A stretch of 64,000 nucleotides of DNA from Isurus oxyrinchus (taxonomy: Eukaryota): contig JANJGN010000026.1 of assembly GCA_026770705.1 (NCBI GenBank), positions 29,822,001 through 29,886,000 of the forward strand, written 5' to 3'. The notes beneath the pieces were generated by a model. The model had not been told where the DNA came from, ran no database searches, and saw only the letters and a program-made list of their open reading frames with translations. The translations under genes were made by a program, and so were the position numbers. Shown in pieces: positions 28,963 through 61,200 of this stretch (position 1 is its first letter; each line of letters begins with the position of its first letter).

Positions 28963-29001
28963 CACAGTGATACAGAACACGGAGACATCTGTACAAATAC
29001 G
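28963..29001 (+). other. 23-bp-spacer RSS of supporting V
   Basis: CACAGTG-atacagaacacggagacatctgt(23)-ACAAATACG. Confidence 0.9.
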
Positions 29002-30377: not shown

Positions 30378-31035
30378 CAGGCGTGAGGGGCTGAATGGCC
30401 TCCTCCTGTTCTTATACAGAAATATTATGTCTCCAGATGCATCGGTTTTTCCGATGGAGAGAGATGCAGAGAAGGGGAAATTCAGATAGACAGAAAGAGA
30501 GAATATTGGAGTAACAGGGAAATAACGAGCAATTTATGTAAATAAATACATTTTGGCGCAGTGTGTGACAATGAGGGATGAGTTGAGGGGTTTAAAAGGC
30601 AACCTTAGAAAATCAGTTATTGGTGCTTGAAGACAATTGGGATTTAATTAAAGGCAATTGATTAAAAACATTAAATACTGTAGTGTTAAACAAAACAATG
30701 TCATAAAATGGGCGGGTTTATGAACACCTACTATTTCTATATTACATCTCCCCATTTTCTCATTGTTCAATAAGAACAACTAATAAATAAAGGGGAATGC
30801 AGGAGACTGCCGCTGTCAAAAACCACACTTTTCTAACCTTCTAACCCCAGTGCCTGAGAAACGTGCAGCTGTAAACCGTTTTCACTGTTCAGTTTCCTTA
30901 TTCTATACATCACAGTAAAACGAGCGGTTTCTGCAATGCGGTCGCCGACAGCTCGATGATCAGTAGAACCGGATTTAGTCATATTAAAATCACACAATGG
31001 GACAAAATTAAAACACAATTTGCTGGAAATCAGAA
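30378..31035 (+). repeat. ~660 bp block with an inverted paralogue at 50228-50901
   Basis: For example TGCTTGAAGACAATTGGGATTTAATT here and its reverse complement AATTAAATCCCAATTGTCTTCAAGCA near 50631-50656; collinear across the block. Confidence 0.85.
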
Positions 31036-32989
31036 ACTGAACCGGAGGATTTTATAGAATGAGCTGCGGGCTCTCTCTTTGTCTGTCTGTTTCTCTATAT
31101 TTCTATATCTATCTCTTTCTCCGTCTGCGCCTCTCACGCTTTGTCAATCACGCGTTCTCCTTCTCCATCTAAATTTCTATCTTTGCCTGTGTCTCCCTCC
31201 GCTTTCTCTCGTAATTTATCTCTCCCCCTCTCTCTCTCTCTCTCTCGCTCTCTCTTGCTCTCTCTCTCGCACACACACTTTCTGCTCTATGCGTCAATCT
31301 TTGTCTCCAACGTCTGTATCTTTCTCAGTGTTTCGGCATATTTTCCTCCCTTTCTCTCCCTCTGTCTCTCACTTTCTCTCTTTTTTCTACTTTCCTTGGC
31401 TTTCGCTTTCCCTATAACAGGCTCTACTTTCATTGTTTCCAATCGAAAGTTACTGGTGCTGTCAGAGATAAAGATTCAGAGTTCACAAACTGAACTCCCT
31501 CCACTCAGGAAATATGGCAACCCAGTGATAGTTTCCGTTCGTGGCCTGTATCAGTTTGTATCACTGTGAATATTCAGCACACAGTAATAAATCCCACTGG
31601 CACTCAGCTCCACATCTGTCAGGGGTAAGCTGAAAAAACGATTAGATACTCGGGGTATTGAAGAGATTCGGCCTCCCACACGCCCTACTTCCTGCCCTCC
31701 CTCAGAATTCATTTTGATTAAAAGCACTGGCTCCTGCCCCGTTCTTTCTGCTTGAACAGATCATATCGTCGGCTGTCTGTGGAGTATGAACAAGGCAACA
31801 CCATATGTCCTTCCTCTATACATGATACTGATGATGCAGGTTGCTTAATTATATTTGAGTAGCACAGACTTTCGAATAGTCAATGAACAGAAGACAAATG
31901 CATGTTTAGGTCCTGGAGACATCAACTCGTTCCTTTCCTTCATCGCACCATCATAGGATGAGGCCATTCAGCACATCGTGGCTGTGTAGCCCCTTTGGTA
32001 GAGGCACCGAATTGTTACCACTCCACTGTTTGCTCCCCTTTGCCTTGCAAAAGTTTCCAATTATGTTTTTGACATTTAATATTGAAACTGCTTCCACCAA
32101 CCTATCCGGCAGTGAACTCCACAATACAACAACTTGGATTGCAAATAAATGGCTGCTCAGGTTGCCTCCGATTCTTTTGTAAACTAATCTAAATCCAAGT
32201 TCTCTGATTACGCAGCTTTCCGCCACTGGATGCAACTTCCCTTATTTATTCAAGTAAAACAGTTCATAATTGTCAATATCGCCGTCAAATTTCCTCCCAA
32301 TCTTTTATGTTGTACAGAGAACAGCCGCAGATTCTCCAGTCTCTCCACAAAGCTAAAGCCCCTCATCAGTTGTGCCTTCCAAGTAAATCACTCCCGCACC
32401 TTCTCCAAGACCCTCAAATCATTAATCATGTATGGTTCACATATTTGTACACAACAATCTAACTGAGACCTTACCAGCTTTGTAGAAACGTTTAGATTAG
32501 CATCCTTTTCCTCTTGATAAAACCAAGAATTTAAAATGTTATTTACAGGATTCTCAGCTGTCACTGCTAACTTCAAATGTTTGAGCACATTGCACCGTAT
32601 CCATCTCTCTGTTCCTACAGTGCTGATCAAATTGCGTCATTTAGTTTTTTTCAGATATCCTCATTATTCTCACCAAAATGCATCACTTCACAAATGCCAT
32701 CTGGTATGTTCCTGGCAAATGGAAATGTCCACGTCCTCCTGAAGTTTGTTACCATTTGCCTCATTGTTTATTACAAACCGAGACCTCTGTCATCTGCAAA
32801 GTCTAAACCAACTATACCAGCGGGTAAGTTATTACATCAATAATTTTACTGGATTATGGTTTACAAATAATTATTATTAATAAATCACTGGCCCAAGTAT
32901 CGAAGTTTAAGGAAGGCAGTTGTAAACTTCATCCAAATTAAAATGAATAATCAACTAGGTCTATCCATCGATCCAGCCCTCATTCACTT

Positions 32990-42001: not shown

Positions 42002-42275
42002 NNNNNNNNNNNNNNNNNNNNNNNNNNNNNNNNNNNNNNNNNNNNNNNNNNNNNNNNNNNNNNNNNNNNNNNNNNNNNNNNNNNNNNNNNNNNNNNNNNN
42101 NNNNNNNNNNNNNNNNNNNNNNNNNNNNNNNNNNNNNNNNNNNNNNNNNNTCTATCTGTCTGCATGTCTCTCCACAACTAGATGACATGCTTCTCCGTCA
42201 GCCCACACACTGACAGTGTGACACTGAAGCCGCAATGCCGGGACCCCCAGTCTCTCACGGCCTGGAAGCAGCCAC

Positions 42276-42629
42276 AGTTAATGTGTTGGCAGTTGCCCTC
42301 AGGGCTCCAGTGTGTGTCTTTGCGCAGGTAAGACGCAGAAATATTGTCTGTGATCCTCAGCTGTCACCTGTGAAACCATTAAGTTGACAACTCTGTAGGT
42401 TCGGATCAGAGACGAGGTGAAGCGGTGTGTGGTGAATGCAGTGCTGTCGCTGAAGCCATTGGTTCAGCGGGTAAGAATGTACTGGGAGTCCCAGGGCAAG
42501 GCATCCCGGTACCAGAATAGGCAGGCCCTCTCCATCTCTTTTAGGGGCAGCTCATTGTCACCATACCTCCCTGCTGAACGGTTACGTCTGCCTCCGGCTG
42601 CTCAGAGAGTGAGGATTCAGCGACACTGC
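42276..42629 (-). pseudogene. TCR alpha/delta-type V pseudogene with 23-RSS
   Basis: GSVAESSLSEQPEADVTVQQGGMVTMSCP* / frameshift / LFWYRDALPWDSQYILTR*TNGFSDSTAFTTHRFTSSLIRTYRVVNLMVSQVTAEDHRQYFCVL; CACACTG(42314-42308)-23-ACATTAACT. Confidence 0.8.
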
Positions 42630-44012
42630 CTGAGGGACAGGGAAGAAAGCATTTAGTTGAGGCTCAGATACTGTGAATGGTAAAATAGAGGTAGCCATGG
42701 GGCACTGGTCATGTCAGCAAATGAGTAACTCGAGCAGTCCAAGTTCATGCTGCGGGGACGTGGGTATGAAATCCAATTTATTTCAAATTAAATTAAATTC
42801 ATCAACCTTGAATATAAAGCTAAGGGTGACCCATGATAACGATCAGCAACTATTATTGAAATAAAAACACCATCTGGTTCACTCAGGTCCTTTGTGGGAG
42901 TGAAGGAAATCTACCATATTTGCCCAGTCTGGCCTAATATGTGTCTCCAGGCTCACAGCAATGTTGTTGACTCTTCGCGCCCCTCCCAAATGATCTAGCA
43001 AGCCATTCAGGACAAAAGGGGTAATTAGAGATGGGCAATAAATGCTGCTCTTCACACTCACACTCACATTGCAGGAAAGGATCAGGGCTAAATGTCAACA
43101 GACAATCGCCCACTGAATCAATGGGCCGTTGACATTTGTTTGTCATTGTTTATTGGCGGTGGGTAAGGCTGGCATTTATTATTGGTTCCCAGTTCCTCCT
43201 CTGGCCAGCGGTGCCCTTCAGCTGCTGCAGCCCCGTGTGGCCCAGGCACCTCCCTCCCCCAACGTGCAAGCACGGAGGGAGTTCCAGGATTCAGATCCGG
43301 CGATAGCATGGGGGACACATGCCCCAACCTGGATGATGTGCATCTCTGGGGTGGTGGAATTGGAGATGGTGGCGCTCCCATGCATTCTCTGTCCTTACCC
43401 TCCCAGGTGATGGAGGTCAGACCTAGGAGAGGCTGCCGAAGGAGCCTTGGCGGATTGTCAGATTTTATTGTGGGAACAGGAAACACTGCAGCCTCCGGTG
43501 AGCGCACTGGTTGTTTAACATCTGCGCCTCAGCCAGAAATAGGAGGAGTGGGAGTTGACCATAGGGTCACTAGAGCCTCCTCTGTCATTGATCCAGGTCA
43601 TGGCTAATCTGACTGAATCTCATCACCACTTTCCTCCCTGCTCCCGGGACTCACAATTTCCATATCAGTCACCAATCAGTCTAACTCCCCTTTGGTTATA
43701 TTCAATGACTCCCTCTGCACAACTTTCGGGTGTAGAGGACTCTGAAGATGCACCCAGATCAAATCAAAATGCTGCAGATGCTGGAAACAGAAAAGGCTGC
43801 AGTCACTAGGCAGGTGTGGCAGCATCTGTGGAGAGAGAGAGAGAGAGAGAAACAGATTTCACTTTTTGGGATCTTTTACAAATCCAATAATTAAATCAAC
43901 TCCACCTCTATGTAATATTAGTGTTTCTGTTTCCAGTCAATCCAATAATCCAAAGGGAAGTGTAGAAGGATTCCTTGGAAGTTAATCGGTGAGAATCTGA
44001 AGTGTAAATCAC

Positions 44013-44064
44013 CTGAGAAGATCGCAGTTAGACTGAAGAGGATGAATCCTATTCGGATATCCAT
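44013..44064 (-). other. Signal-peptide (leader) exon with promoter; partner V exon uncertain
   Basis: MDIRIGFILFSLTAIFS plus phase-1 donor G|GTGATT; TATAAA at 44126-44121, with CCAAT and ETS-like CCGGAAG motifs just upstream. Confidence 0.6.
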
Positions 44065-44947
44065 CTGCACCTTCTCTATATGCAAAAGGTACAACAGCGA
44101 ATTAAACAAGGGCTCCCCTCTTTATACTGAGGACCAGGGCAGAACCGGAAGCGCAATGATTGGACTTCCAGCCCAACCAGGAACTTTTAAATCAAAGTTT
44201 TGTTATAGACTTAACTCAGTAAGCGTGTTGTCAGTCTTCGGAACATCATTAGCTCTCTGAACTAAAGGGAACAACGACAGGGACAATTCTGATCGCCCCC
44301 GCCAGGTGGCGGCAAACCCTCAGGAACTGCTGCGATTGTACATGTGGGAACTTTTTAATCAGGTTCACATAATTATTGCCACCTTCTCCACTTGGCGTAC
44401 TTCTGTTTTCACTGCAGGCTGATACTCCACAGCAATTATTTCTTGTCCTCTTGTCTCTGAAGCAGCGCTAAACTGGTGGGACTGGTTGCAAGAAAGGGGC
44501 TGGAGATTGTTCTGGGGAAATGGGAACTGGCGAGGAGCCAGTTCAGCCCCCACAACGTTAATGGAATCATCAGAGGGAGGATCAGCATTCAAAGGGAACG
44601 ATTTCAGATGCCCCTTAGGTGGATTGTGCTTGTTTTATTTTGCCCAGCCAGGACTGTACTCACCTGTCAGTGTCTGAACTTTTTTTTTATTTGTGAAAAA
44701 TATACTTCATTCATAAAATATATCTGAAAGAACATTGCAAAACATTTCTGAATGGCCATCAGAAAAAGTGCAATCAGGTTCAACTTTTACACAAAGGTGC
44801 TTCAATACAAACAATGAATATGACAGTCATTTCCACATGGTCATTACAGATAGTCAGACAGAGCAATGGGATTGCAGTTATCAGTGCCTGGCCCGCTGTG
44901 ATAAACAGCCTTCAGCAGACAGCAGCTGTGAGCCAGGAAGCTGCAGC

Positions 44948-45104
44948 AGTTACTGCTCGAGGCTGTCACTCGGTTCCCGTCACTGTGAGACTCAGAATAA
45001 GTAATAACCATCGCCGGTATAGGTGCAGGTTAGAGTGACATCTTCTCCCTCTGTCTGTATGAGTGAGGATTCCAGCTGAGTAACAGAATCTCCATCGCTC
45101 AGAC
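44948..45104 (-). pseudogene. TCR alpha/delta V pseudogene with internal FR2-FR3 deletion and retained RSS
   Basis: Acceptor TTCCAG, then GLSDGDSVTQLESSLIQTEGEDVTLTCTYTGDGYYLF*, then directly CACAGTG(44987-44981) with a 23/24-bp spacer and GCAGTAACT. Confidence 0.8.
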
Positions 45105-45200
45105 CTGGAACACACGTTTAAAGAAAGAGAGAATCAGCGATTAAAACTGCAACTGGACTCAACTGGCAGCATTGGGTCAAGAGAACAGGTTATTGGGCAC

Positions 45201-45446
45201 AATTGGTGTCTTTGGGTGTTTACAATCGCCAGGAGCATCTTCCATCACTCTTTATTCACTCCACCAAAATACCCTTCCCTTCATTCCCCCATCATCTGTC
45301 CAATTATATCAGAGACACTATTCAACTGGTGTCTGTGGGTGTTTACAGTAGCCAGGAGCACCTCCCATCACTCTTCCTTCACTCTCCCAACATAGCCTCC
45401 TCTACATTCCCCCATCACATGTCCAATTATATCACGGACACTGTTC
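45201..45446. repeat. Tandem duplication, 2 x ~123 bp
   Basis: Two diverged copies of TGGTGTC..GGGTGTTTACA..GCCAGGAGCA..GTCCAATTATATCA. Confidence 0.75.
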
Positions 45447-47924
45447 ACCCGAAATCCTCTTTGCGAACGTGACTTCAACATTCTAAACATTCCCTGGGGA
45501 GAACCCTCTCCTGAATTCCCCATTGGATATTTTTTTTACCACTCTTGTATTTGTGCCCCGTAGCTTTATAACCCATGACATGTGGAAAGATTTTCCATTT
45601 CAACCCTATCAAATCCCTTCATCCATATATAGATCTCTTTTAGCTTGTCCCTCAGTCCTGACTTATCTGGGAAGAGTAACCCCACCTTCTCCAATTATTT
45701 CTTATCAATGTTGCCCCTCAATTTTGGTATCATCCTGGTAAATGATTTCCCACCAATTTCTCTTGGTTTTTTGTCCGCTTTTGTTAACACTGCAAAAGTG
45801 GTCCAACAGCGGGTCGGTCAAAGGTTATCATCAACTCTCACGTTTTCACATTGATTCATGCAGAAATTAAGATTAATTTTATAAATGTTTCATCTTCTTA
45901 TTCACAATGAATTTTCCCCAGACCACAGCTACAGTGCTGCTGCTGCAGAATCCCAGGGACTTCTCTGTGTCTCAGAGAGCTTCGGAATATCCAGTCAGAA
46001 ACGCTGACGCCATCTACCTATAGGAAAGGGCTGGGATTGGTCTGATGTCACATCCTGCGGGACATCCAACATAAAGAACTCAAAGGATGGGCGGATGTCA
46101 CTTGTATGGGATTAATTTACAGAATCTAACCATAAAGGCCATGCCCGACTGATCAGAGCCAAATAAAATATACACACAAGGCACCCGGAGCTCTAACTGA
46201 TCTGAGAGACAGCTTGATTTGTAATTGAACCGAGAGACAGTTTGAACTTTAGCAGATCTGAGAGAGTTTGATCACGAATTCAGCAGAGAGGCTGCTTGAT
46301 ATTCAATGGATCTCTGTTTGTATATATCTGCCGGCGTAGAGGTGTTTCTGTGAGTCCGTTTGTGGCTGTGCATGTGTGTGCTTGAGTGCTTGAGAGTAGA
46401 GGCAAAACAGACCTCATTGATTCTGATCAATACCAATAAGTCCCTGAAAAGCAGATCAGCCACGATCTTATTAAATGACTGAGCAGGTTCGATGGGCTAC
46501 TCCTGCTCCTTGTTCGTTTGGTCGCATGACCTGACAGATAATTCCCCGCACTGAAGAGCGCCAGGCTCAAGAATTATCATTGGGAACCAGCTCACGTCAC
46601 ACCTCATCATTATCTCACATCTCAATAAGTATTTCTTTCAGGGTATGAACTCCGTTCTCCCCTGAGTGCTGCCACACAGACAACATGGTTGCCTGGATGA
46701 GTGCAGCTCCAAAAACACTCGAGAAGACTGACAATATCCAGGACAAAGCAACCTGCTTGATTGGCACCACATCCACAAACATTCACTGCCTCCACCACTG
46801 ACGCACAGTAGCAGCAGTGTGTATCATCTACAAGATGCACGGCAGGAATTCACCAAGGATCCTTCGACAGCACCATCCAAACCCATGACCACTACCATCT
46901 AGAAGGACAAGGGCAGCAGATAGATGGGAACACCGCCAACTGGAAGTTCCCCTCCAAGCCACTCACCATTCTGACTTGGAAATACATCGCCGTTCCTTCA
47001 CTGTCACTAGGTTAAAGTCCTGGAACTCCCTCCCTAACAGCACTGTGGGTGTACACACGCACACCTTTAGCAATCTACCCTCTGCTGGACACTCAGAAGC
47101 TCACACACAGACAAACACACCTATTTAGCAATCTTCACTCCGCTGGACATTGCCAGAATCACACACATATTTAGCAATCTTCACTCTGCTGGACACTCAT
47201 AGAATACTCCTGCAAAAATAATTCATTCAATTATCCATTCTTCAACAAGCGACGTGGATTATTTGGGCATAAATGGTTGAATGTACCTGACAGCCTGAGA
47301 AAATGCTGCTAAAACATCCAGTATCATCAGCTTCATAACAGCAGCATAGAATCCAAAAGAAAGTAAGTGCTACTGATCCCCTGGAAAGCACTGGTTCCCT
47401 CTCAACTGGAGCGTTCTGTCCACTTCCGTGCGTCGCACATGAGGAAGGATGTGAATGGCTTAGAAAGGGCGCAAAGAAGTTCATCAGAATCGTCCCAGTG
47501 ATGCAGAACTTCAGTTAATTGGATAGAGTGGGGAAACTGGGCTTGTTCTTCATGGAGAATGGAAGGTTCAAGGTAGATCTGATAGAGGTGTTCAAAATCA
47601 TGTGGGTCTGAGCCGAGTAGATCAAAATAAACTGTTTGTATTGGTTGAACGGGAGAGAGGAAGAACAGGAGGTTGGGCTTAGGTTCGCTTCCTTGGTGAA
47701 TGGGCTGTGGAAGGCAGTGGCTCCAACAATTCACTGCGGCTGGGAAAGCTCCCTATCTGTGGCACAGGGTGTGCGAGCGTCACTCTGCGAGAATTGTCCG
47801 CACATTCGCGGCTGTACAGATCCATCGCTTAAGCCCATTAAGGCCGAATGTTTATTTTGAAATCATTTTTCGTATAAACTGAGTCTTACCTGCATACACG
47901 CCAGATATGCACAGCCTGCTCTAT

Positions 47925-47928
<4 letters not shown>

Positions 47929-47987
<59 letters not shown>

Positions 47988-47988
47988 A
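47929..47988. repeat. (CA)n microsatellite
   Basis: Long, nearly pure CA run. Confidence 0.95.
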
Positions 47989-49329
47989 CTGTGCTTGACA
48001 GAAACCTGGCGGCCGGTTCTCAATGTCTCAGGGCAAAACTTTGTCAGCACGACAACAGGACGGTGATTGGCTTTTTCTCCCATTGACTCAGGATCAGGAG
48101 GCCACGAAACAGCTTCAGACTCCGCCCACCTTTTAAACACCCAGCTTGCAGATCGTGTAACCCTTGACCTTGGAAGAGGGGTCAAACAGCAGTCCTTAAA
48201 GGGCCGCTGCACCGCTCGAGCTGTTTCGCTAAGTTTTAGTATTTAGGAGGAGTGAATAGTAGCTGAAATAAGGATCGGAAGAAAGTGACATTTTTAATGT
48301 ATTTATTCAGTAAGGTGGCTAAATAGCAATTGGTTATTTCCAACAAGTAAAAACAACTTCGTACAGTTAACACGTAAAGTAGAAACAATAGTTTTCGAGG
48401 AGTACATGCCATTAATTCAATGCAATGTTGTAGTAGAAACACAATCTGGATCGTTTTTATCACTGTATCCTATTACAACAAAGCATATGGACTTGGGAAT
48501 ACGATAATAATTGGATCCTGGTGAATGCTAACGGAGATAGAGCCTGGCGTAATAACCAAGGGGGAAGTGGCTAGCACAATAATAATGGGGATCAATTAAA
48601 ATATTCGCAAAGACCCCAGCGTAGTAATCAAGAAGCCTAGGGCTAGTACATAAATATACTAATACTTCCTTATGTGACTTAACCTCAATTTAGTTTCACA
48701 GCTCCCGTGTGAGGCGCTTTGGGAAGCTTTATCAAATTAAACATGTTGTGTAAATGCACGTTATTGTTGTGAGATTAGGCTTTGCGTTGTGTGGATATTC
48801 GTTAGTTAATGCGAGCATAATGTGCATTGTGTGGGTGTAACTTGCATTGTGCGTGGACCCTGTGTGTTGTGTGTGAGTCTAACTTCTATGATGTGAATAC
48901 CTTAGGCAGCATTTGACTCTCACTGTCATTCTGATTCTTACCTAGTCTTATGTCACTGAGCTATGCTGTCTTCGGCCTGTTGGCTAACGAGGTTTCTTTC
49001 AGTGTCTCCCATAAATGAAAGTTCCACATGATTAAGCCTACTGTAGATCTCCCCAAGCACTATGTGGTTCCATTCAATGCTACATTGGGCTGCATGAGGC
49101 ATCAAGAGTCGATAGTCGTCTCCCAGGTATCTCCCAACATTCCACCTCTCCCCAAAAAGAACATGGAAAATAATTGCTGAATCTATTTGTTCAAGTAACT
49201 GTAAATAATGATGGAGGCTAACTGCCTCTCTGTAGAATTCCAACAGTATAAATAAGGGTCTATTTGAGCTTGGCACAGAAAATCTCTGTGATCAGCTGTC
49301 ACCGCAGAGATCATCTTTTCTCATAGAAA

Positions 49330-49399
49330 ATGCACGGCAGAATATCTGGTGTAGTTTATGCCATTTACAATCCAATTCTTGCTGCTATTGGAGTTCTGG
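49330..49399 (+). pseudogene. Exon 1 of a GPR139-like GPCR (start of TM1); exon 2 not seen
   Basis: MHGRISGVVYAIYNPILAAIGVL(G) resembles the YYPILAAIGVP|xN first exon of shark GPR139-like receptors; TATAAATA at 49247-49254; donor is GCGAGT rather than GTGAGT. Confidence 0.55.
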
Positions 49400-50227
49400 G
49401 CGAGTCTTTGGACTAAACCATAACTTGGACAAATCATTGTTTTAAGAAGCTGGTTCTGTCATTGACAATTAACAATGTGACATAGTCATCTCCAGGTTTT
49501 TGTTTAAACTCATTTGCTCAGGGATACACTATCTTTCCATCGTTTTAATATTTATTTGTTTTAAACTCAAGCATTAATAATTAAGCCTCTGAAACACCCA
49601 ATGCTCTGCGTCTATTCCTTTATACCATCCTGTGCCGGGCCTGCTCAGGTCGCAAGGTTGATTTTTAAAAAGTAATATTCTGGTAATCTTTTCGAAACCT
49701 ATAATTCATGGCTATTCTTCTCTACAATTCTGGAGGGATGTGGAACGAGATGCAGGTTCATTATCAGCCATTTCAAATTTCAGCTTGAAATTAATCTTCA
49801 CCTGCTTGAAATGTTTGAGGGGTGAAATTGGCTTTGAACTGTTAAGGAAGCTGGCTACCAGTTTTACACTCGATCGAGTTCTATGTCTCATTGACATCAG
49901 AGGAGTAGAAATCAGACCGAGTGTAAAACAGGCGGCTCATTCGATGCAGCCCACAAAATGTTCCTGCCCCATGGGAGTCAAAGGATATCGGGGGCACGTG
50001 AGAATGTGGAATTGAGACCATAATCAGAATAGGCATGATCTTATTGAATGGCAAAGCAGGGTAGAAGGGCCGAATGGCTTGTTACTGCTCCTGATTCGGA
50101 TGTGTTTATGTCCTTGAAATATTCGCCCAAGACTACTGAATTAATAGTTTATTGGTATAGCCACTATCGTAATCTTCCCTTTAAGTTTGGGCTCCATTTC
50201 ATTACGTCCATCAATTATTATTTCCCA

Positions 50228-50901
50228 TTCTGATTTCCAGCAAATTGTGTTTCAATTTTGTTCCACTGGGTGATTTCAATGTGACTAAATCCGGCTCGAA
50301 TGATCAATGGGCATTGAACAGTCGGCGGCCGCACTGCAGAAACTGCTCGTTTAACTGTGCTGTTTAGAATTGGGAAACTGAGCAGTGAGAACAGTTAACA
50401 GCTGCTGGTCTCTCTGGCTCTGAGGTTAGAACGTTAGGAAAGTGTGGTTGTTGAGAGCGGCAGTCTCTAGCATTCCCCCTCACCTCCTTTTATTTATTAG
50501 TTGCTCTTATTGAACTATAAAAAAATGAGGAGATGTAATACAGAAATAGAAGGGGTTCATACGCCCGCCCATTTGATGACTTTGTTTTGTTAAACACTGC
50601 AGTATTTAATATTTTTAATCAATTGCCTTCAATTAAATCCCAATTGTCTTCAAGCATCAAAAACTGACTTTCCAAGATCGTCTTTTAACTCTCAACTCAT
50701 CTGCCATTGTCACACACTGTGCCAAAATTATTTTTTGAATAAATTGCTCGATATTTCCCTGTCAGTCCAACATTCTCTTTTTCTGTGTACCTGACTTGCC
50801 TTGTCTGCATCTCTCTCCATCGGATAAACTCTACCTCTGCACCTGGAGACATGATATTTCTCTACAGGAACAGAAGGAGGCAATTCAGCTCCTAGAGCGT
50901 G
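50228..50901 (-). repeat. Inverted paralogue of 30378-31035
   Basis: Reverse-complement similarity across the block, ending exactly at the RSS heptamer at 50902. Confidence 0.85.
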
Positions 50902-50940
50902 CACAGTGTCACAGAGCATGCAGTGAGATGTACAAAAACC
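50902..50940 (+). other. Orphan perfect-consensus 23-RSS with no V exon
   Basis: CACAGTG-tcacagagcatgcagtgagatgt(23)-ACAAAAACC; spacer and 3' flank (ATGGTGGGATT) resemble those of the supporting-V RSS at 28963. Confidence 0.9.
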
Positions 50941-52729
50941 TGAACATGGTGGGATTACAGACACAAAGTGATACAAGGCAGGGAAAGAGTTCAGATTCTT
51001 GTCCATTTTTGGNNNNNNNNNNNNNNNNNNNNNNNNNNNNNNNNNNNNNNNNNNNNNNNNNNNNNNNNNNNNNNNNNNNNNNNNNNNNNNNNNNNNNNNN
51101 NNNNNNNNNNNNNNNNNNNNNNNNNNNNNNNNNNNNNNNNNNNNNNNNNCCCACCCCTTGGAGGTCAATCATCTCAGCTCCAGGGCATCACTGCAGGAGT
51201 TCCTCAGGGTAGTGCCCGAGGCCCAACCATCTTCAGCTGCTTCTTCAATGACCTCCCTTCCATAATAACATCAGAAGTGGGGATGTTTGCTGATGCTTGC
51301 ACAATGTTCAGCAGCATTCACTACTCCTCAGATACTGAAGCAGTCCATGTCCAAATGCAGTAAGGCCTAGACAACATCCAGGCTTGGCTGACCAATGCTG
51401 ATGACTTGTCCTCCAGAAGTAACATTTGCGCAACACAAGTGCCAGGCAATGACCATGTCCAACAAGAAAGAATCTAATCATCGCCCTTTGGCATTCAATA
51501 TCATTACCATCGCTGAATCCCTCAATATCAACATGCTGGGGGGTGGTGGTGGGGTTACCATTCACCAGAAACTGAACTGAACAAATCATATAAACATGTG
51601 TGGCTAACAGAGCAATTCAGAGGCCTGAGTAACTCATCTGCCTCCCAAAACCTGTTCACAATTTACAAGGCATAAGCCAGGGGTGTTCTCCACTTGCCTG
51701 GATGAGTGCAGCTCCAACAGCATTAAACATGTTTGACATTATGCAGGACCATGCAGCCTGCTCGATTGACATCCCATCCATAAACATTAACTCACTCGAT
51801 GACCGGCGCACAGTAACAGCAGTGTGTACCATCTTCAAGGTGCACTGCAGGAATTCACCAAGATTCCTGAGACAGCACCTCCCAAATGCACGACCACCAT
51901 CATCTAGAAGGACAAGGGCAGCAGATAGATGGGAACGCCACCACCTGGAATTTCGTCTCCAAGTCACTCACCAGCCTGACTTGGAAATATATTTCCATTC
52001 CTTCAATGTCTCTGGATCAAGATCCTGGAACTCCTTCCCTAACAGCACTGTCGGTGTACCTGCACCAGATGGACTGCAGCTGTTCAAGAAGGCAGCTCAC
52101 CATCATCTTCTCAATTGAAAAGCAGGTTATTGCTAAGCAAGTGCCGCTTGAGAACACTATTGATGACCCCTTCCATTACTTTACTGAGGGTCGAGAGTAG
52201 ACTGATGGGGCGGTAATTGGCTGGATTGGATTATTCCTACCTAGGAATTTTCCACATTGCTGGGTAGATGCCAGTGTTGTAGCTGTACTGGAACAGCTTG
52301 GCTAGGGGCAGGGGAAGTTCTCGAGTACAGGTCTTCAGTACTGTTGCTGAATATGTAAGGGCCCATAGCCTTTCCATTATCCAGTGCCTTCAGCCGTTTT
52401 CTGATATCACGTGGAGTGAATCGGATTGGCTGAAGACTGGCAATTAGGGATGGGGAATAAGTACTCGTCGAGCTAATGAAGCCCTGATTCCATGAATGAA
52501 TTAAAAAAAAATAGCATTAAGCGCACTTGGTACTTAATTAATTTGCATGAGTTATTTGATGAGGCAGTGGAGAGGGTTGACGAGGTGAATGCAGTTCATC
52601 TGCCATACATGGACACCGCACATAGACTTTGGTAAGGGGAGGGAGTAGGGTTGAAAGAGCGAGCGGAGATTCGGGGAAAGGCCGGGTTAGAGAGTTGGAG
52701 CTAATTGGGAAGCTCTTTCAGAGAATCAA

Positions 52730-53910
52730 TGCAAGGCACAATGGGGAGCGCCACAGGGATCAGTGCCGGGGCCACACTTATTTACAATAGATATTAATGA
52801 CTTGGATGAGGGAAGCGAATGCAATCTCACCCAGTTTGATGATGACACAAAGATAGGTGGGAAGGCAAGCGGTGAGCATGACACAAGGAGTCTACAGAGT
52901 GATATAGACAGGTTAAATGAGTGGGCCAAAAATGCGGCTGATGGAAAAATGTGGGAAAATGTGTGGTTATGGCTGGAAGAATAGAGGAGCTGAAAATTAT
53001 TTAAATGGAGAAAGAATGCAGGAAGCTGCAGCACAGAGGGATCAGGGTCGTCCTCGTGCATGAATCCCATAAAGCTAACGTACAAGTTCAGTAGGTAATA
53101 AGGAAGGCAAATGGAAGGTAGCCTTTATTTCAAAGGGAGTGGAGTATAAAAATAGGGAAGTCTTGCTGAAACTTAACAAGGCACTAGTTAGACCACACCT
53201 AAAATAATGTGAACAGCTTTGATCCGCTTATTTAAGGAAAGATATCCTGGCATTCGAGGCAGTCCAGAGAAGGTTCACTAGGTTGATTCCGGGGAAGGGC
53301 AATAGCAATTCCCGCAGAACATTTAAGAAATATTTGGATGTGCACTGCCATGGCATACAAGGCTGCGGGCCTAATGCTGGACAACGGGATTAGAATAGTT
53401 AGGTACTTGTTTGACCAGTGCAGATTTGATGAGCCAGAGGGCCTTTTTCTGTGCTGGAGACCTCTATGACTCTGTGGAGGGACTTTCTTATGAGGAGAGG
53501 TTAATCATTAGAGTTTAGAAGAATGAGAGGCGACCTTATTGAAACATATAAGATTCTTCCGGGGCTTGACAGCGTAGATGGTGAGAAGTTGTTTCCCTTT
53601 GTGGGAGAGTCTAGGACCATAGGGCATAATCTCAGAGTAAGGGGTCGCCCACTTAAAACAGAGATGATGAGGAATTTCTTCCCTGAGGGGAGTCAATCTG
53701 TGGAATATTTTACCGCAGTGGGCGATAGAAGTTGATTCGTTAAGTGTATTCAAGGCTGAAATAGGCAGAATTTTAGTCAGTAAGGGAATCAAGGGTTATG
53801 GGAAAAAGACAGGAAAGTGGAGTTGAGGATTGTCAGATCAGCCACGATGTCACTGAATGGCGGAGCAGACTCGATGGGCCGAAAGGCCCACGTCTGCTCC
53901 TATCTTTTAT
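52730..53910 (+). mobile_element. Nested CR1-type LINE RT and 3' fragments
   Basis: PQGSVPGPHLFTIDINDLDEG..FDDDTKIGG and MRGDLIETYKIL motifs. Confidence 0.8.
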
Positions 53911-54589
53911 CCTCTTGTGGACCAAAAGGCCTCCTGCTTGTGTTGAACGATTTCCTGATTCTCAGGGTCGTTCCTGCTCCCCCTGCTTTGAGGGCTCGCC
54001 AGTCTACTCGAGGCCTGCACAATCCTGAGCATACAGATGGGGCTCCTGTGCACTGAAGCGCTTACAGCTGCTCCGCACACAGCATGCTCATTTTGACATT
54101 AACTCTGTCAGTGTGAAATCTTCGTGCTTGTCTCAAAAAAAATGCACAAGCGGAAACAGGAACCTTGATTGATTTCATTGCCCTGAAATAAATGAAGCAG
54201 CCCAGAACCTGTCTTTCTTGGCTTGAACTCTATGGTCTCTTTGTCGTTCTCGCTGCTCGAAGCTGAACGTTGAAACGGTGTTGCTTTCTGCATGTATTGT
54301 TATCCAGGAGACAAACAAAGCCATCGTGACTTTTTCCCTGCTCCGACATACCAGCGGCAGCCAGGAGGGGGCGCACAGAGTGCGTAGCAGGACACCAAAA
54401 ACAGAAAGTATCAGCATTAACATAGGCTGGTTAGTCATTAATCCAACAGTGGATTGAAATATTGAAAGCAGGAGGTGATGGTGTAGTAGAGATGTCTTAA
54501 GCTATTAAGCCAGCGGCCGGGGCTAATGGTCATAATCATAAATTCACAGAGTCTACAGCACAGCGCTTCGGACCATCGTGTCTTTGCCG

Positions 54590-55095
54590 GTCAAACATGT
54601 ACCTAACTATTCTAATCCTATTTTCCAGCACTAGGCCCGAAGGCTTGTATGCCGTGGCATCGCACGTGCACAGCCAAATACTTTTTAAATGTTATAAGGG
54701 TTTCTGCCTCTACCACCCTTTCAGGAAGTGAGTTCCAGATTCCCAGCACCCTCTGGGTGAAAGAATTCTTCCTCACATCCCCTCTAAGCCTCCTGCCCCT
54801 TACGTTAAATCTATGCTCCCCCTACACCTCCCCGGTTATTGTTCATTCCACCAAGGGAAAAGTTCCTTCTTGTCTCGCCTATCTATGCCCCTCATAATTT
54901 TATACACCTCAATCATGTCCCTCAATCTCCTCTGCTCCAGGGAAAATAACCCCAGTCTATCCAATCTCTCTTCGTAACTAAAACTGTCCAGCCCAGGCAA
55001 CATCCTGGTAAATCTCTTCTGCACTGTCTCTAGTGCAATCACACCCTTTCTACAATGCGGTTTCCAGAATGGAATACTCTAGCTGTGGCCTAACC
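54590..55095 (-). mobile_element. CR1-type LINE 3' fragment
   Basis: ORF 54836..55042 LETVQKRFTRMLPGL..FSLEQRRLR. Confidence 0.75.
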
Positions 55096-55124
55096 ACCGG
55101 ACACATGGGTTCAAATCCAATTTC

Positions 55125-56390
55125 AATTGGTTTTTTGAAGGGAAGGTCGTGTCTCATTAACTTGATCGAGTTTTTCAAGGAAGTGACAAAGATGATCGCC
55201 GATGGAAGGGCAGTTGATGTTATCTACATGGATTTCAATAAGGCCTTTGACAAGGTCCCTCATGGCAGACTGGTACAGAAGGTAAAGTCGCACGGGATCA
55301 GAGGTGAGCTGGCAAGATGGATACATAATTGGCTTAGTCATAGAAGACAGAGGGTAGCAGTGGAAGGGTGCTTTTCTGAATGGAGAGCTGTGACTAGTGG
55401 CGTTCCACAGGGATCAGTGCTGGGACCTTTGTTGTTTATAGCATAGTTAAATGATTTGGAGGAAAATGTAACTGGGCTAATTAGTAAGTTTGCAGACGAC
55501 ACTAAGGTTGGAGGAGTTGCAGAGAGTGAAGAGGACTGTCAAAGGATACAACGGGATATAGATCGGTTGGAGACTTGGGTGGAGAAATGGCAGATGGAGT
55601 TTAATCTGGACAATTGCGAGGTAATGCATTTTGGAAGGTCTAATACAGGTTGGAATCATACAGTAAATGGCAGAACCCTTAAGTGCATCGACGGGCAGAG
55701 GGACCTGGGTGTACAGGTCCACAGGTCACTGAAAGTGGCAACGCAGGTGGATAAAGTAGTCAGGAAGGCATATGGCATGCTTGCCTTCATCCACGGGGTG
55801 TTGAGTATAAAAGCTGGGAAGCCATGCTGCAGCTGTATAGAACCTTGGTTAGGCCACACTTGGCATATTTCGTGCAATTCTGGTCGCCACATTACCAGAA
55901 GCATATGGAGGCATTGGAGAGGGTGCAGAGGAGGTTAACCAGGATGTTGCCTGGTCTGGAGGTTATTAGATATGAGGAGGGGTTGGAGAAACTCGGATTG
56001 TTCTCACTAGAGCGACGGAGATTGATAGAAGTTTACAAAATTATGAATGGCATGGACAGTGTCGATAGTCAGAAGCTTTTTCCCAGGGTGGAAAAGTCAA
56101 TTACATAGATTTAAGATGAGAGGAGAAAACTATAGAGGAGATGTGCGGGGCAAGTTTTTTACACAGAGGGTAGTGAGTGTCTGGAGTTCGCTGCCAGAGG
56201 AGGTGGTGGAAGCAGGTAAGATAGCGGTGTTTAAGAGGCAGCTTGACAAATACATGAATAGGATGGGAATAGAGGGATATGGACCCCGGAAGTGCAAAAT
56301 GTTTTAGTTTGATATGTAATATGATCGGCACAGGCTTGGAGGGGCGAAGGGCCTGTTCCTGTGCTGTATCTTTCTTTGTTCTTTGTAATT
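55125..56390 (+). mobile_element. CR1-type LINE RT-to-3' end, broken frame
   Basis: GFLKGRSCLINL, VDVIYMDFNKAFDKVPH, SGVPQGSVLGP, KFADDTKVGG and C-terminal motifs, with tail. Confidence 0.9.
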
Positions 56391-56693
56391 CAATGAATAA
56401 ATGGGTTCTGTAATGATGACCATGAAAGGGTTATCAAATGTCCTAAAACCCTATCTGGTTTCTTAGTGCCCGTTAGGGAAGGAAACCTGTCACCTTTACT
56501 TCCGTCTGGCCTACACGTGACTCCAGCCACAGAGCAACGTGGTTGAATCCTCAGTGACTCTGAATTGTTCGGTTCAAGGGTCAATTAGTGATGGGCAGCA
56601 AATATTGGCTTTCCCAGCCAAACCCCGTGAAGGAACCCTTTTACATTTGGCTTTGCATGCTATAGCTTTTGAGATAGTGCATATATTGCAGAG

Positions 56694-56765
56694 GCCGTCT
56701 TGTGGCGCAGTGGTTAGTGTCCCTGTCCTGAACCAGGTACTCCACGTTTGAGTCCCACTCTAGAA
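56694..56765 (+). mobile_element. tRNA-derived SINE head
   Basis: A box TGGCGCAGTGG and B-box-like GTTTGAGTCCC; no intact cloverleaf. Confidence 0.55.
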
Positions 56766-58219
56766 TTTCAAGAGCAAGGAAGATGCGTTCATATCGCGAT
56801 TATTGACCTGCAAGTGCTTCTGGTATGCTTAGAGAGCTTGCATATGGAAAATCAAAGATCTTAATTAACCACAATGGTTGGCCAACAAAGGGAAGTCCAT
56901 GATTGCCGAATGGCATTTCAGGGCATGGTACCTCTGACCTGGAATATTTTCCCTGGAAATTGGTGAGCCATTGGTGCATTGCTAATGTCACTGCAGTTAC
57001 AAACCCTGGGGGCTAATTTTCTGGGGACACAGGTTCATTATCCCACCCGAGCAGTTGGTGCAGTTTCAATTCAAGTGATAAATATGAATTGAAAATTCGT
57101 CTCAGTAGTAACCTGTCATTAAAAACTCACCAACGTCCTTTAGGGAAGGAAATCTGCTGGCCTTATCCTGGCCTGGCCTACATGTGACTCCAGATCCACA
57201 TTATTGGCTCTGAACTCCCCTCCGTAAATGCCCCAGCCAAGCCACTGAAGAGTAATTAGGGCCCATGCCAGCATCCCATTCAATTAATCATTACATTCAT
57301 GAGGCGATGGGCCTAATGGCCTCTCTCTGCGCTGTACTATGCAATGATTCTCAGAAATGCCTGTGCTTTTGCTCGTCTGCAGCTTGAGTGTGTCACTCTC
57401 CTCCATGCTGCCAATCTCTGACAATACCCATAGGGGCACCATTGCACTGATCGTCTTGAAGCAGCTCAGCTCACTGCACAGTGAGTAGTGCATTAACGCT
57501 TTAAGTGCTGGATCACACATCGGGATTTCAATCAGAAGCTGGGGCTGAAAAAAGACACATCACCGACTTCAGTGCGCACCCTTACAGTGTTGAGATGGTT
57601 CAGGCTGTGTAACACAAGGCAGCAAATTGTCTTGCTTTGTTTTTAAATGTCTGCTTTGCTTTCTCATGATTTAACGTTTGAGTCGCACATTCAGTGCTTG
57701 CTGGATGCCTTGGTGTCGAGAAGGAAAAAAAGACTTTTCCTGATTTATTCTATTTCATTATTGAAGGAGACAAGTGAACATTCGAAAAGGAAGCTGGGAA
57801 ACTGATGATCATTTATTGAGTGCGAGGATCAAAGGCAGAAATGAGAGGTCAGTTCAAATTGATTGGAAGGTTTTACAAGTTAAGCAGGCGAGCTGGTTAC
57901 CATGAGATAGCGGCGCAGTGGCAATGTCACTGGGCTTTAATCCAGAAGCCCAGGTTAATGCTTTGGGGGACATGGGTTCAAACCCCACCAGGACGCATAA
58001 TCGAATTTAAATTCTATTCATTGGAAAATGATACTCGCAGTGATGGTATCCACGTGACTGCGATCATTGATGGTTAGAAAAGCCCATCTCATTTACTAAT
58101 ACCACCCGCAGAGAATAAAGTCTGGCCGACAGTTCTGTCTGCCTGTGTAAGGAAGGTTACATACACGTTACTGAGTGAGGCAATGGTATAATAATGGGGA
58201 TGCTGAGGTTAGGCCTATA

Positions 58220-61200
58220 AGGAGCAAGAGTAGACTATTCAGTCCGGCGATCATGCTTGATCCTCTCCCTCAACTGCATTTTCCCGCCCATAGCCCTTAA
58301 TTGCCCGATTCACCAACAAATTTCCATCTCTGCCTTAAATGTCTTCAACGGTGGAGCACTCACAATTCCCTTGGGTAGAGTATTCCAAAGCTTCACAGCC
58401 CTCCAAGTGAAGACATTTCCCCTCCTCTCAGTGCTAAATAATCGGCCCCTTATCCTGAGACAGTGCCCCCATGTTCTGGATTCCCCAGCCAGGGGTATAC
58501 GATCTCTGTGTGTGTCCACCCCCTATCGAGCCCCTTCAGAATGATGCCGTTCTCAATGGGATCGCCTCTCATTCTTCTAAACTCCGGAGAATATAAACCC
58601 AATTTACTCAGCCTCTCATGCTAGGACAACCTCCTCATACCAGGGACCAGCCTAGTGAAACTTTGCTGGACCGTCTCCAGCACAAGTATATCATTTTTAA
58701 ACTGACCAAAACTGCACAGAGTATTCCAGATGTGAACACATGAAAACCCTGTACAATTGGAGCAAGGCTTTATCTGGTCTCGTCTATATGTGCCTGAACA
58801 GTAAAGTGCTTGACTCTTAATTAGAGTGAATTGTCAACTTGCCTTGCAAACAAGTTCAAGGGAAATTAGGGATAAGTAGCCAATTGTGGCCTTTCCAGCG
58901 ACACCCACCTCGTATCATGGAGTCAAGGAAAAACCCCTTGGGTGTTAACGTATTAGCAAAATTATTTCAGGATGGTTTCCCTAAGCGCAGTCAGAATGTG
59001 AAACTTTATTAACCCCCGGTTAAAAGAGGCAAATAGCACCTCAGGTACATTGAGAAGGAAAATGCACTCCGGGCTCAACAGTGACTTCACTAATTTAAGA
59101 TCATATCCCGCACTCCCAGTTATTCGGACACAGGTTGTTGGTGATGGTTCTGACACTGATATTGACGGCTCCTCTGAACGCATCTTTTGTTTGTTTACTT
59201 TGTTAAATTATTTTAATGGGATGTGGATATCGCTGGCAAGGGCCTATATTTGTTGCCCAAACCGAATTACCTGGTGAACTGAGTGGTTCGCCTCGCCATT
59301 CCAGGGGGCAGTGAAGAACATTGCTGTGGGTCTGGAGTCGCATGGAGGCCAGACCTGGTGTGAACAGCAGATTTCCTTCCCTAAGGGGCATGGGTGAACC
59401 GGGTGGGTTTCTACGATAATCAATGAGTTGCTGAGATTAACTTCCTGAGTCCAGATTTTTTGAATTGAACTCAAATTTCACCAGTTGCCAGAAGGGGAGT
59501 TGAGCCCCTTTCCCCCAGCGGACTAGCCTGGGTCTCTGAATTAAAAGTCCGGTACCATAAACACTGTGCCAGCGCTACCCTGGTGTGCGCTTCCTTTGCC
59601 TCATCCCTATTTACCACCTAATCTCACACAAGAACTAAGAATTAGGAGCAGGGGCAGGCCATTTGGCCCTTCGAGCATGCTCGGCCATTCGATATGATCG
59701 GGGCTGATCTGATTGTGGCCTGAAATCCACTTTCCTGCCCCCGGTCCAATAGCCCTTACCTCCCCTGCGCTCAAAAATACAATCTGTCCAACTCAGCCTC
59801 GAATATATTTATTAATCCAGCCTCCACTGCTCTCTGGGGGAGAGAATTCCACAGACTGGCGACCAGCTGAGAGAAAGTTGATTGTCTTCATCTCAGTCTT
59901 ATACACTCTTAACTGTTCACCTGTGTCACCTGCTTCTAGGCTGCCCCCTAAGGGAAATATTCTATCAGCATCCATCTTGTCAAAGCCCCTCAGCATCATA
60001 CATGGTTCCATAAGTTCCCATCTCATTCTTCCTAACTCAAAAGGGTATATTCCCAACCTTCTCAACCATTCCTCTTAAGATGACCACTTTTTAAATTCAT
60101 TTATGGCACCTGAGCGTCGCTGGCATTTGTTGCCCATCCCTGATTGACCTGTAAGAAGTGGTCGGGTGCTGCCTTCTTGTGACAATGCAGTATATGTAGT
60201 GTAGGTGCACCCACAGTGCTGATGGGGAGGGAGTTCCAAGATTTCGACCCAGCGACAGTGAAGGAACGGCCGATATGTTTCCAAGTCAGGATGGTGAGTA
60301 GTTTGGAGAGAGAATTCCAGGTGGTGGTGTTCCTAACTATCTGCTGCCTTTATTATTCTAGTTGGTAGCGTTCGTGGGTGTGGAAGTTGCTGACGAAGGA
60401 ACCTTGGTGAGTTCCTGCAGTGCCTCTTATAGATGATACACTCTGCTGCAAATGTGTGTCGATGGTGGATGGAATGAATGTTTGTTGATGTGATGCCAAT
60501 CAAGCGGTTGCTTTGTCCTGGATGGTGTCATGTTCCTTGACTATTGCGGGAGCTGTACTCATCGAGGCAAGTCGGGAGTATTCCATCACACTCCTGACTT
60601 TTGCCCTGCAGTTGGGGAATTAGGGAGTGAGTTTCGCATAGCACGATTCCCAGCCTCTGACTTGCTCTTGTAGCAACAGTATTTATATGGCTTTTACAGT
60701 TCAGTTTCTGGTCAATATTAATATGGACGAACCTGAGTGCCTTAGCTCGGTGAAAAACACCTGGAATGAGTGGGTTGTCATATGAGGAAAGGTTGGACAG
60801 ACTGGGCTTGTTTCCACTGGAGATTAGAAGAGTGAGGGGTGACTTGATTGAAGTTTACAAGATCCTGAATGGCCTTGACAAGGTGGACGTCGAAAGGATG
60901 TTTCCTCATGTGGGTGAGTCCAGAACTAGGGGCCACTGTTTTAAAGTTAGAGGTCGCCCTTTTTGGGACAGAGATGAGGGGAATTCTTTTCTCTCAAAAG
61001 GTTGAGTGACTTTGGAATTCTCTGCCTCAGAAGGTAGTGTCATTGAATAGTTTTAAGGCAGAGATAGATAGATTCTTGCTAGGCAAGCGAATCATATGTT
61101 TTCAGGGTTAGATGGGAATGTGGAATTCGAAACACAAACAGGTCAGCGATGATCTTATTGAATGGCGGAGCAGGCTCGAGGAGCCGAATGGTCTAATCCT

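What the first reader, a model, noticed from the sequence alone, without database searches (positions are those of the whole stretch)
50228..51012. Candidate fossil RAG signal joint fixed in the genome
Seen: a perfect 23-RSS whose spacer (14/23 identical) and 3' flank match the supporting-V RSS, with no V exon; the break is exactly at the heptamer edge. Its left neighbour is an inverted copy of the block lying ~1.4 kb downstream of the intact supporting V (30378-31035). The junction GAGCGTG|CACAGTG forms GTGCAC (50899-50904), the head-to-head signal-joint signature. This copy has CAC on the minus strand where the unrearranged paralogue has CAG. Inference: in a second NAR-TCR cassette, RAG recombined the V RSS with a cryptic heptamer downstream by inversion (or inserted a signal end there), and the product entered the germline. 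With the V-D fusion at 20.6 kb, this would be a second footprint of germline RAG activity. Caveats: the cryptic partner has no good nonamer, and an assembly gap begins 72 bp after the RSS.
Basis: partly seen in the sequence, partly recalled or inferred. Interest (0 to 1): 0.85.

Follow-up and report, generated by a model that had tools for sequence, protein, structure and literature searches.

The report
Orphan RAG cut-signal fused to a repeat
In a shark T-cell-receptor locus a perfect "cut here" recombination signal has lost its gene segment and is fused, to within one base of its edge, to the inside of a common repeat; this is real, inherited DNA and may be a scar of the RAG enzyme cutting in germ cells, but it is not a clean signal joint and the proposed inversion is not supported.

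Summary
The sequence facts hold. The window's only zero-mismatch 23-RSS lies at 50902-50940 and has no V exon. To its left, 50228-50893 is an 83% inverted copy of 30386-31035, and the junction reads GTG|CAC.

New points:
1. The last ~44 nt before the heptamer are the 5' start of a very abundant interspersed repeat. This repeat continues in copy A and stops here. The family consensus shares the C at 50902, so the break is placed to within about 1 nt.
2. The "partner" is CAC only: heptamer 4/7, nonamer 0-2/9.
3. The left block is a family of roughly 20 copies, so A is not a private paralogue.
4. The RSS is the first unit of a short tandem RSS array (~60-nt period), a family trait that this scan had already noted behind such V segments.
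5. An independent contig, 98% identical and at single-copy depth, bridges the junction. It is therefore germline and not an assembly chimera.
6. No homologue of 29022-30377, no V and no second RSS end lies to the right.

Verdict: probably (about 0.45-0.6) a germline RAG signal end joined to a heptamer-only cryptic site, most simply by a deletion. Chance, non-RAG breakpoints remain a serious rival (about 0.3). The scan reported a cleaner signal joint elsewhere in this genome.

The parts
50228..50857 (+). Left block: member of a low-copy family (about 20 copies); inverted copy of 31035-30431
   Evidence: 83% identity to copy A. Raw-read depth of about 2.6-17 per bin against about 0.3 for single copy.
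50858..50901 (+). First ~44 nt of a very abundant interspersed repeat (motif GGAGGCCATTCRGCCC), cut off at the junction; the same insertion is shared with copy A
   Evidence: The motif occurs 9 times in the window against 0.7 expected. Family alignment A2. The repeat continues past this point in copy A, towards 29901.
50899..50904 (.). Junction GTG|CAC (ApaLI palindrome); the break is placed at 50901|50902, or one base to the right
   Evidence: The repeat consensus ..GCCTGC shares the C at 50902.
50902..50940 (+). Perfect V-type 23-RSS (heptamer 50902-50908, spacer 50909-50931, nonamer 50932-50940) with no coding segment
   Evidence: Spacer 14/23 identical to the supporting-V RSS.
50941..50961 (+). 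Post-nonamer linker, conserved with the supporting-V flank 29002-29021
   Evidence: 15 of 18 nt in register.
50962..51002 (+). Second, decayed RSS-like unit (CACAAAGTG ... CAGATTCTT), ~60 nt after the first: remnant of a tandem RSS array
   Evidence: It matches the family unit seen between tandem copies in reads (tables 5/5c). Within the window alone the evidence is weak (p about 0.03), and TRF finds nothing.
51013..51149 (.). Assembly gap (not filled, on instruction); a LINE reverse-transcriptase fragment starts to its right
   Evidence: RVT_1 hit at 51151-51360.
30386..31035 (-). Copy A of the block plus repeat start; the repeat continues to about 29901
28963..29001 (+). 23-RSS of the intact supporting V-delta (V exon 28653-28962): the closest relative of the orphan RSS in the window
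31533..31571 (-). 23-RSS of a minus-strand V (31572-31850), lying 497 bp upstream (in its own direction) of block A, which has B's orientation relative to it

Best explanation
This is a real, inherited, V-less 23-RSS. It is the first and still perfect unit of a short tandem RSS array, of the type that follows supporting-V-delta-like V segments in this shark.

Its V exon is gone. The first base of the heptamer abuts, within about 1 nt, position ~44 of a very abundant interspersed repeat. That repeat lies at the end of a 0.65-kb block belonging to a low-copy family.

Most likely mechanism: RAG cut at the V/heptamer border in a germ-line cell, and the blunt signal end was joined to a heptamer-only (CAC) cryptic site inside the repeat. 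That gives a signal-joint-like scar.

The simplest geometry is a deletion from a layout [block - repeat - ... - V | RSS array]. The two signal-type ends stay on the chromosome, and V plus the intervening DNA are lost. No inversion and no reciprocal product are needed.

Shown: the RSS, the junction, the identity of both flanks, and germline-level read support. Inferred: RAG involvement and the geometry.
For: - A perfect RSS, unique in the window and far beyond chance.
- Spacer and post-nonamer linker are related to the supporting-V RSS.
- No V coding lies nearby.
- Homology to copy A and to the repeat family runs up to 50901/50902 and then stops.
- The three bases on the other side are GTG, i.e. 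CAC on the minus strand, the minimum that RAG needs.
- Contig record 7 of run X1 (365 nt, depth 9.0, against 10.2 for an exact-match neighbour contig) bridges the junction with 209 and 107 nt on the two sides and differs at 5 letters and 2 gaps. The junction therefore exists in a second allele, individual or copy at germline depth.
- Block A lies downstream of a V RSS in B's orientation.
- Germline RAG activity in sharks is established for Ig genes (Lee et al. 2000, as discussed in PMC2193153).
- Unchecked lead: a scan note reports a cleaner retained signal joint in another cassette of this genome (s1-865375).
Against: - The partner is not an RSS: heptamer 4/7, nonamer 0-2/9 at every spacer, so no 12/23 pairing.
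- The repeat consensus and copy A read CAG/CTG there, so CAC needs a prior substitution.
- 1 nt of shared sequence leaves the exact break undecided.
- RSS-like units number about 100 or more in the genome and stand in tandem elsewhere. With many array edges, one starting at a heptamer could be chance.
- The ancestral, unrearranged state was not seen.
- Only one run set is shown to bridge the junction, and it may be the assembly's own source.
Confidence: 0.45

Rival explanations
1. A non-RAG rearrangement. An ordinary deletion, a replication template switch, or the spread of the RSS minisatellite placed an array edge inside the repeat. The coincidence with the heptamer border and with GTG is chance, picked out by scanning a very large locus.
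For: - RSS units are highly repeated and stand in tandem elsewhere.
- Scan notes report a 15-kb RSS-like satellite and many arrays.
- 1 nt of microhomology is possible.
- The partner lacks any RSS features beyond CAC.
- The repeat's ancestral CTG needs only one change to give GTG.
Against: The chance of an edge within about 1 nt of the heptamer start is roughly 3/62, and of GTG on the other side roughly 1/64 to 1/25. Together that is about 0.1-0.2% per array edge (inference). The first unit is a perfect 16/16 consensus while the next is decayed.
Confidence: 0.3
2. An inversion inside a second NAR-TCR cassette, between the supporting-V RSS and a cryptic heptamer 1.4 kb downstream, leaves a reciprocal coding joint with a minus-strand V to the right.
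For: The geometry is self-consistent with the layout of copy A. The RSS and 20 nt of flank resemble the supporting-V RSS.
Against: - No homologue of 29022-30377 and no V lies in 51150-64000.
- No NAR V, NAR J or supporting V lies near B.
- The block is a family of about 20 copies, so A's orientation is not diagnostic.
- The flank homology stops after 20 nt.
Confidence: 0.08
3. RAG transposition, or re-insertion of an excised signal-ended fragment or circle, into the repeat (as in PMC1820826).
For: A signal end is joined to non-RSS DNA at a CAC. Episome reintegration at cryptic RSSs is documented in lymphocytes.
Against: No second RSS end, no 3-5-bp target duplication and no displaced remainder of the repeat lies in 51150-64000. 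The gap hides the first 137 nt.
Confidence: 0.05
4. An artefact: an assembly chimera next to the gap, or a somatic T-cell rearrangement captured from lymphocyte-containing tissue.
For: The junction lies 111 nt from a contig end, and the RSS array is a repeat that breaks short-read assemblies.
Against: An independently built contig of another data set bridges the junction at the depth of neighbouring unique sequence and carries its own differences. No shared long k-mer exists that could cause a de Bruijn mis-join.
Confidence: 0.04

Closest known systems
Germline-joined Ig genes of cartilaginous fish (RAG acting in germ cells; Lee et al. 2000, discussed in PMC2193153)
   Same: An inherited product of a cut at a coding/heptamer border in a shark antigen-receptor locus.
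   Different: The germline-joined genes are coding joints between two true gene segments. Here only a signal end survives, it is joined to a repeat, and no coding joint is present.
Chromosomally retained signal joint (normal product of inversional or outward-facing RSS pairs); scan note s1-865375 reports one in another NAR-TCR cassette of this genome
   Same: The heptamer is fused without loss, and GTG|CAC stands at the junction.
   Different: A true signal joint has two RSSs obeying 12/23. Here the partner has only CAC (4/7 heptamer, no nonamer).
Cryptic-RSS recombination and episome reintegration in lymphocytes (PMC1820826)
   Same: A bona fide RSS is joined to a heptamer-only cryptic site in non-receptor DNA.
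   Different: Those events are somatic. Here the junction is inherited, and no second junction of an inserted fragment was found.
Tandem 23-RSS arrays (62-bp period) behind supporting V-delta-type V segments in this and other sharks (scan notes s1-300800, s1-300784, s1-868583)
   Same: The unit structure is heptamer, 23-nt spacer, nonamer and a ~21-nt linker, repeated at ~60 nt. Reads show the same units in tandem elsewhere.
   Different: Here the array has no V in front of it, and only about 1.8 units lie before the gap.
Deleting elements: human deltaRec and Kde (PMC2198968, PMC6730487)
   Same: An isolated, good RSS without a coding segment, lying upstream of the D/J-delta region (the J-delta array lies about 23 kb beyond the window, per scan note s1-871279).
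   Different: No use in rearrangement has been shown here. The position relative to J-alpha is unknown.

Membership tests
V(D)J signal joint | Two RSS heptamers fused head to head with little or no loss | tested here: inconclusive
   The right side has an intact perfect heptamer. The left side has only CAC, with CACGCTC scoring 4/7. 1 nt is shared with the repeat consensus.
V(D)J signal joint | The partner is an RSS of the other spacer class (12/23 rule) with a nonamer | tested here: not met
   Nonamer matches of 0-2/9 at spacers 11-13 and 22-24.
V(D)J signal joint | Reciprocal coding joint on the chromosome, if made by inversion | tested here: not met
   No V and no homologue of 29022-30377 lies in 51150-64000. 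None is required if the event was a deletion.
Germline (inherited) rearrangement | The junction is present at allele-level depth outside a lymphocyte clone, ideally in several individuals | tested here: inconclusive
   One run set (X1) bridges the junction at depth 9.0, against 10.2 for neighbouring sequence, with 5 differences and 2 gaps. For X3, X5 and X21 no bridging piece was among the rows shown. The tissue is unknown.
RAG transposition / signal-end insertion | An RSS-ended fragment flanked by a 3-5-bp target-site duplication | tested here: inconclusive
   No second RSS end or displaced repeat remainder lies in 51150-64000. The gap is unread, on instruction.
Tandem 23-RSS array of supporting-V-delta-type V segments | Repeated units of heptamer, 23-nt spacer, nonamer and linker at a ~60-62-nt period | tested here: met
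   Unit 1 is 50902-50961 and the decayed unit 2 runs from 50962. 'Goes back 47-62' joints with RSS-like letters between them appear in four runs. Alignment to the family unit.
Tandem 23-RSS array of supporting-V-delta-type V segments | The array directly follows a V exon | tested here: not met
   Repeat-derived sequence, not V coding, precedes the heptamer.
Second NAR-TCR cassette | A NAR V, a NAR J and a leaderless supporting V close to the feature | tested here: not met
   Beyond the cassette at 20.3-29.0 kb, V-set hits are limited to minus-strand pseudo-V segments at 31.6, 40.5 and 42.3 kb.
Deleting element (deltaRec/Kde-like) | An isolated functional RSS without a coding segment | tested here: met
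   A 16/16 consensus RSS with no coding segment.
Deleting element (deltaRec/Kde-like) | Observed rearrangement to a downstream partner that deletes the locus in lymphocytes | not tested
   This needs thymus or blood DNA or RNA reads.

The most novel reading that the evidence does not exclude
The V-less but perfect 23-RSS is kept because it works. On this reading it is a shark counterpart of the deltaRec/Kde deleting elements: a coding-free RAG target, upstream of the D/J-delta region, that removes or inactivates part of the TCR alpha/delta locus when used. Its origin would be a germline RAG scar that was then co-opted.
Probability: 0.07. Interest if true: 0.75.

Novelty: new variant of a known kind. 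Interest (0 to 1): 0.42.

Why it matters
Germline RAG activity in sharks is known from joined Ig genes, which are coding joints. The other half of the reaction, a signal end fixed in the chromosome, and off-target use of heptamer-only sites in repeats have not been described as inherited events.

If true, this would show that RAG reshapes the giant shark TCR alpha/delta locus by deleting V segments, and that it can engage transposon sequence in germ cells. That bears on how antigen-receptor loci evolve and on how dangerous RAG is to a genome.

The case is weakened because the partner is barely a signal. It also matters less because a cleaner example was already reported by this scan in the same genome.

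Tried and rejected
1. Reciprocal product of an inversion. Sensitive blastn and nhmmer searches of 28600-30400 against 42151-64000 found only the RSS plus 20 nt. tblastn with five V queries found no V.

2. Insertion or transposition. A search for the repeat's remainder and for CACTGTG ends to the right found only independent repeat copies with their own 5' parts. The repeat copy at 50110-49940 (minus strand) is likewise independent.

3. D segment. No 12-RSS lies upstream of the heptamer, and the window holds no D-like double-RSS unit.

4. Hidden V displaced by TE insertion. None was found on the + strand in 42.7-50.9 kb.

5. TRF on 50700-51012 found no tandem array. Unit 2 is too decayed and there are fewer than 2 copies.

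6. Rfam found nothing in the window.

7. Junction support in runs X3, X5 and X21 could not be read.

Loose ends beyond 51012 were not used.

Full report
**Setting**

The window is part of a shark TCR alpha/delta locus.
- A complete NAR-TCR cassette lies on the + strand. It has a NAR V at 20369-20650 with a 12-RSS, a NAR J from 21033 with a 23-RSS, and a leaderless supporting V at 28653-28962 with a 23-RSS at 28963-29001. Both V exons are Pfam V-set domains.
- Three V (pseudo)genes lie on the minus strand, at 31572-31850, 40518-40802 and 42329-42610.
- The window has four assembly gaps. The feature sits at the right end of the contig 42151-51012.

**Check of the observation**

CACAGTG-23-ACAAAAACC at 50902-50940 is the only zero-mismatch 23-RSS in the window. 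Even matches with up to 2 mismatches are expected only 0.08 times in shuffles, against 4 seen, three of which belong to known segments.

Its spacer is 14/23 identical to that of the supporting-V RSS. The 18 nt that follow the nonamer match in register (15/18), after which similarity ends.

No V-like coding precedes it.

To its left, 50228-50893 is an inverted copy of 31035-30386 at 83% identity. The junction reads GAGCGTG|CACAGTG. Copy A reads CAG where B reads CAC on the minus strand. The gap begins 72 nt after the nonamer.

1. *The left flank ends in a high-copy repeat.* The last ~44 nt before the heptamer (about 50858-50901) are the 5' start of an interspersed repeat with the motif GGAGGCCATTCRGCCC.
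   - The motif occurs 9 times in the window, against 0.7 expected.
   - More than a dozen further copies of the repeat body lie in the window.
   - A neighbouring independent copy draws about 5000-fold raw-read depth.
   - Copy A has the same repeat at the same place next to the block, so it is one old insertion. In A the repeat runs on for several hundred nt.
   - In B it follows the family consensus up to ..GCGTGC and then turns into ACAGTG.. (alignment A2).
   - The C at 50902 is common to the repeat and the heptamer. The break is therefore at the heptamer border, or one base inside it. It cannot be placed further away with any confidence.

2. *The partner is hardly a signal.* Read on the minus strand from the junction, it is CACGCTC (4/7). 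No nonamer scores better than 2/9 at any 12- or 23-type spacing. The family consensus and copy A have CAG there.

3. *The block is not a private paralogue.* About 1.9 Gb of raw WGS reads (X21) were laid at 80% likeness or better.
   - Only 4 reads in the 2-kb stretch were 99% alike or better, which puts single-copy depth near 0.3.
   - The block bins carry 2.6-17 (mean about 7.6), which means roughly 20 copies.
   - Contigs from other copies are 83-88% like B, the same distance as A.

4. *The RSS is part of a tandem array.*
   - The two RSS bins carry depths of about 50 and 32, which suggests 100 or more units in the genome.
   - Contigs and reads in all four runs 'go back' 47-62 nt between 50963-50988 and 50902-50929, with RSS-like letters between (tables 5 and 5c).
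   - In the window a second, decayed unit (CACAAAGTG ... CAGATTCTT) starts at 50962 and aligns to that family unit.
   - Earlier notes of this scan describe 62-bp-period arrays of 23-RSS units behind supporting-V-delta-type V segments in this genome and other elasmobranchs (s1-300800, s1-300784, s1-868583). I used them as a lead and confirmed the local part only.
   - The array probably explains why the short-read contig ends here.

**Is the junction real and germline?**

A 365-nt contig of run X1 (record 7) lies on 50692-51009 in one piece, with 209 nt left and 107 nt right of the junction.
- Its depth is 9.0. A neighbouring exact-match contig, record 4 at 50085-480, has depth 10.2.
- It differs from the window at 5 letters and 2 gaps.
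- A mis-join would need a long shared k-mer, and none exists.
- A clonal T-cell product would not reach single-copy depth.
- The differences show the junction exists in a second allele, individual or copy.

I therefore take it as inherited. The caveats are that X1 may be the assembly's own source, that its tissue is unknown, and that for the other runs no bridging piece was among the rows displayed.

**Testing the proposed mechanism**

The sequence after the gap is a LINE reverse-transcriptase fragment. No other cassette part lies near B.

*Insertion.* An insertion (RAG transposition or episome re-entry, PMC1820826) predicts a second RSS end, a short target duplication and the displaced remainder of the repeat. 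None is seen in 51150-64000, though the gap is unread.

*Deletion.* A simpler route fits the window's own layout. Block A lies 497 bp downstream of the RSS of the minus-strand V (31571-31533), in the same orientation relative to that V as block B has to the orphan RSS. In a head-to-tail series [V-RSS ... block-repeat ... V|RSS array], one deletion from inside the repeat to the next V/heptamer border gives B directly.
- If RAG made it, the two signal-type ends stayed on the chromosome, and V left with the excised DNA.
- That is why no reciprocal product exists.

**RAG or chance?**

For a random array edge or deletion end:
- Falling within about 1 nt of the heptamer start has odds of about 3/62.
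- GTG on the other side has odds of about 1/64, or up to about 1/25 given the ancestral CTG.
- Together this is about 0.1-0.2% per edge (my inference).

For a RAG cut, both features are expected. Germline RAG action is established in sharks (PMC2193153, reporting Lee et al. 2000).

Against this stand the near-absence of RSS features in the partner, the need for a prior substitution to create CAC, the large number of RSS arrays in this genome (many chances for a coincidence), and the selection inherent in a scan.

I put RAG origin at about 0.55-0.6 in all:
- 0.45 for the deletion or unspecified-geometry version.
- 0.05 for insertion.

Non-RAG breakpoints get 0.3 and artefact 0.04.

**Function**

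Most likely there is none. It is a scar, and unit 2 is already decaying.

The first unit is nevertheless a 16/16 consensus, better than the RSSs of the intact V segments in the window (7/9 and 6/9 nonamers). It points towards the D/J-delta region; a scan note places the J-delta array about 23 kb beyond the window.

A coding-free good RSS in that position recalls deltaRec and Kde (PMC2198968, PMC6730487). That reading is untested and I give it about 7%.

**Comparison and novelty**

The feature works like a chromosomally retained signal joint but fails the membership test for one, because the partner is not an RSS.

It belongs to the known theme of germline RAG footprints in cartilaginous fish, as a new variant: a signal end rather than a coding joint, with a cryptic site in a transposon.

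The scan has already reported a cleaner head-to-head signal joint in another cassette of this genome (s1-865375). That lowers the marginal value of this one but makes a RAG origin more plausible.

**Limits**

- Only this window and one read-laying run were available.
- No other shark assemblies could be searched.

Noticed in passing
window 34800-34905, minus strand: A J-like remnant. A 12-RSS (nonamer AGCTTTTGT, 12-nt spacer, CACTGTG) abuts directly on GGAGCTGGGACCAAC (G-A-G-T, the FGXG core without its upstream residues), followed by a GTAAGT donor. The J coding part is only ~17 nt, as if trimmed up to the heptamer.
   Followed up: no
window 31572-31850, 40518-40802, 42329-42610 (all minus strand): Three V (pseudo)genes lie in the orientation opposite to the NAR-TCR cassette. 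The first has a 23-RSS converging on the supporting-V RSS 2.6 kb away. The other two carry in-frame stops. Both orientations occur within single contigs, so this is not a scaffolding flip.
   Followed up: partly
window 49940-50110, minus strand: An independent copy of the abundant GGCCATTCGGCCC repeat. Raw-read depth is about 5000, against about 0.3 for single copy, which implies on the order of 10^4 copies in the genome.
   Followed up: partly
window 12452-13545 vs 24858-25952: A 1.1-kb inverted repeat pair at 88% identity. One copy lies in the 7.6-kb interval between the NAR J and the supporting V, and it is probably a transposon fragment (ORFs there gave no Pfam hit).
   Followed up: no
window 3776-4655, 8607-9398, 17435-17770: Blocks of a tandem repeat with a period of about 84 nt. 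They are present in both orientations on either side of 5-8 kb.
   Followed up: no
window 49495-49533, minus strand: A perfect nonamer ACAAAAACC lies 23 nt from GATAGTG. It is a 2-mismatch 23-RSS hit without the essential CAC, and is probably chance.
   Followed up: no
window 20609-21085: The NAR V ends in a 12-RSS that faces the 23-RSS of its J, with no free D. According to scan follow-ups this is an old trait shared by many cassettes, so it is not an independent second footprint specific to this window.
   Followed up: no
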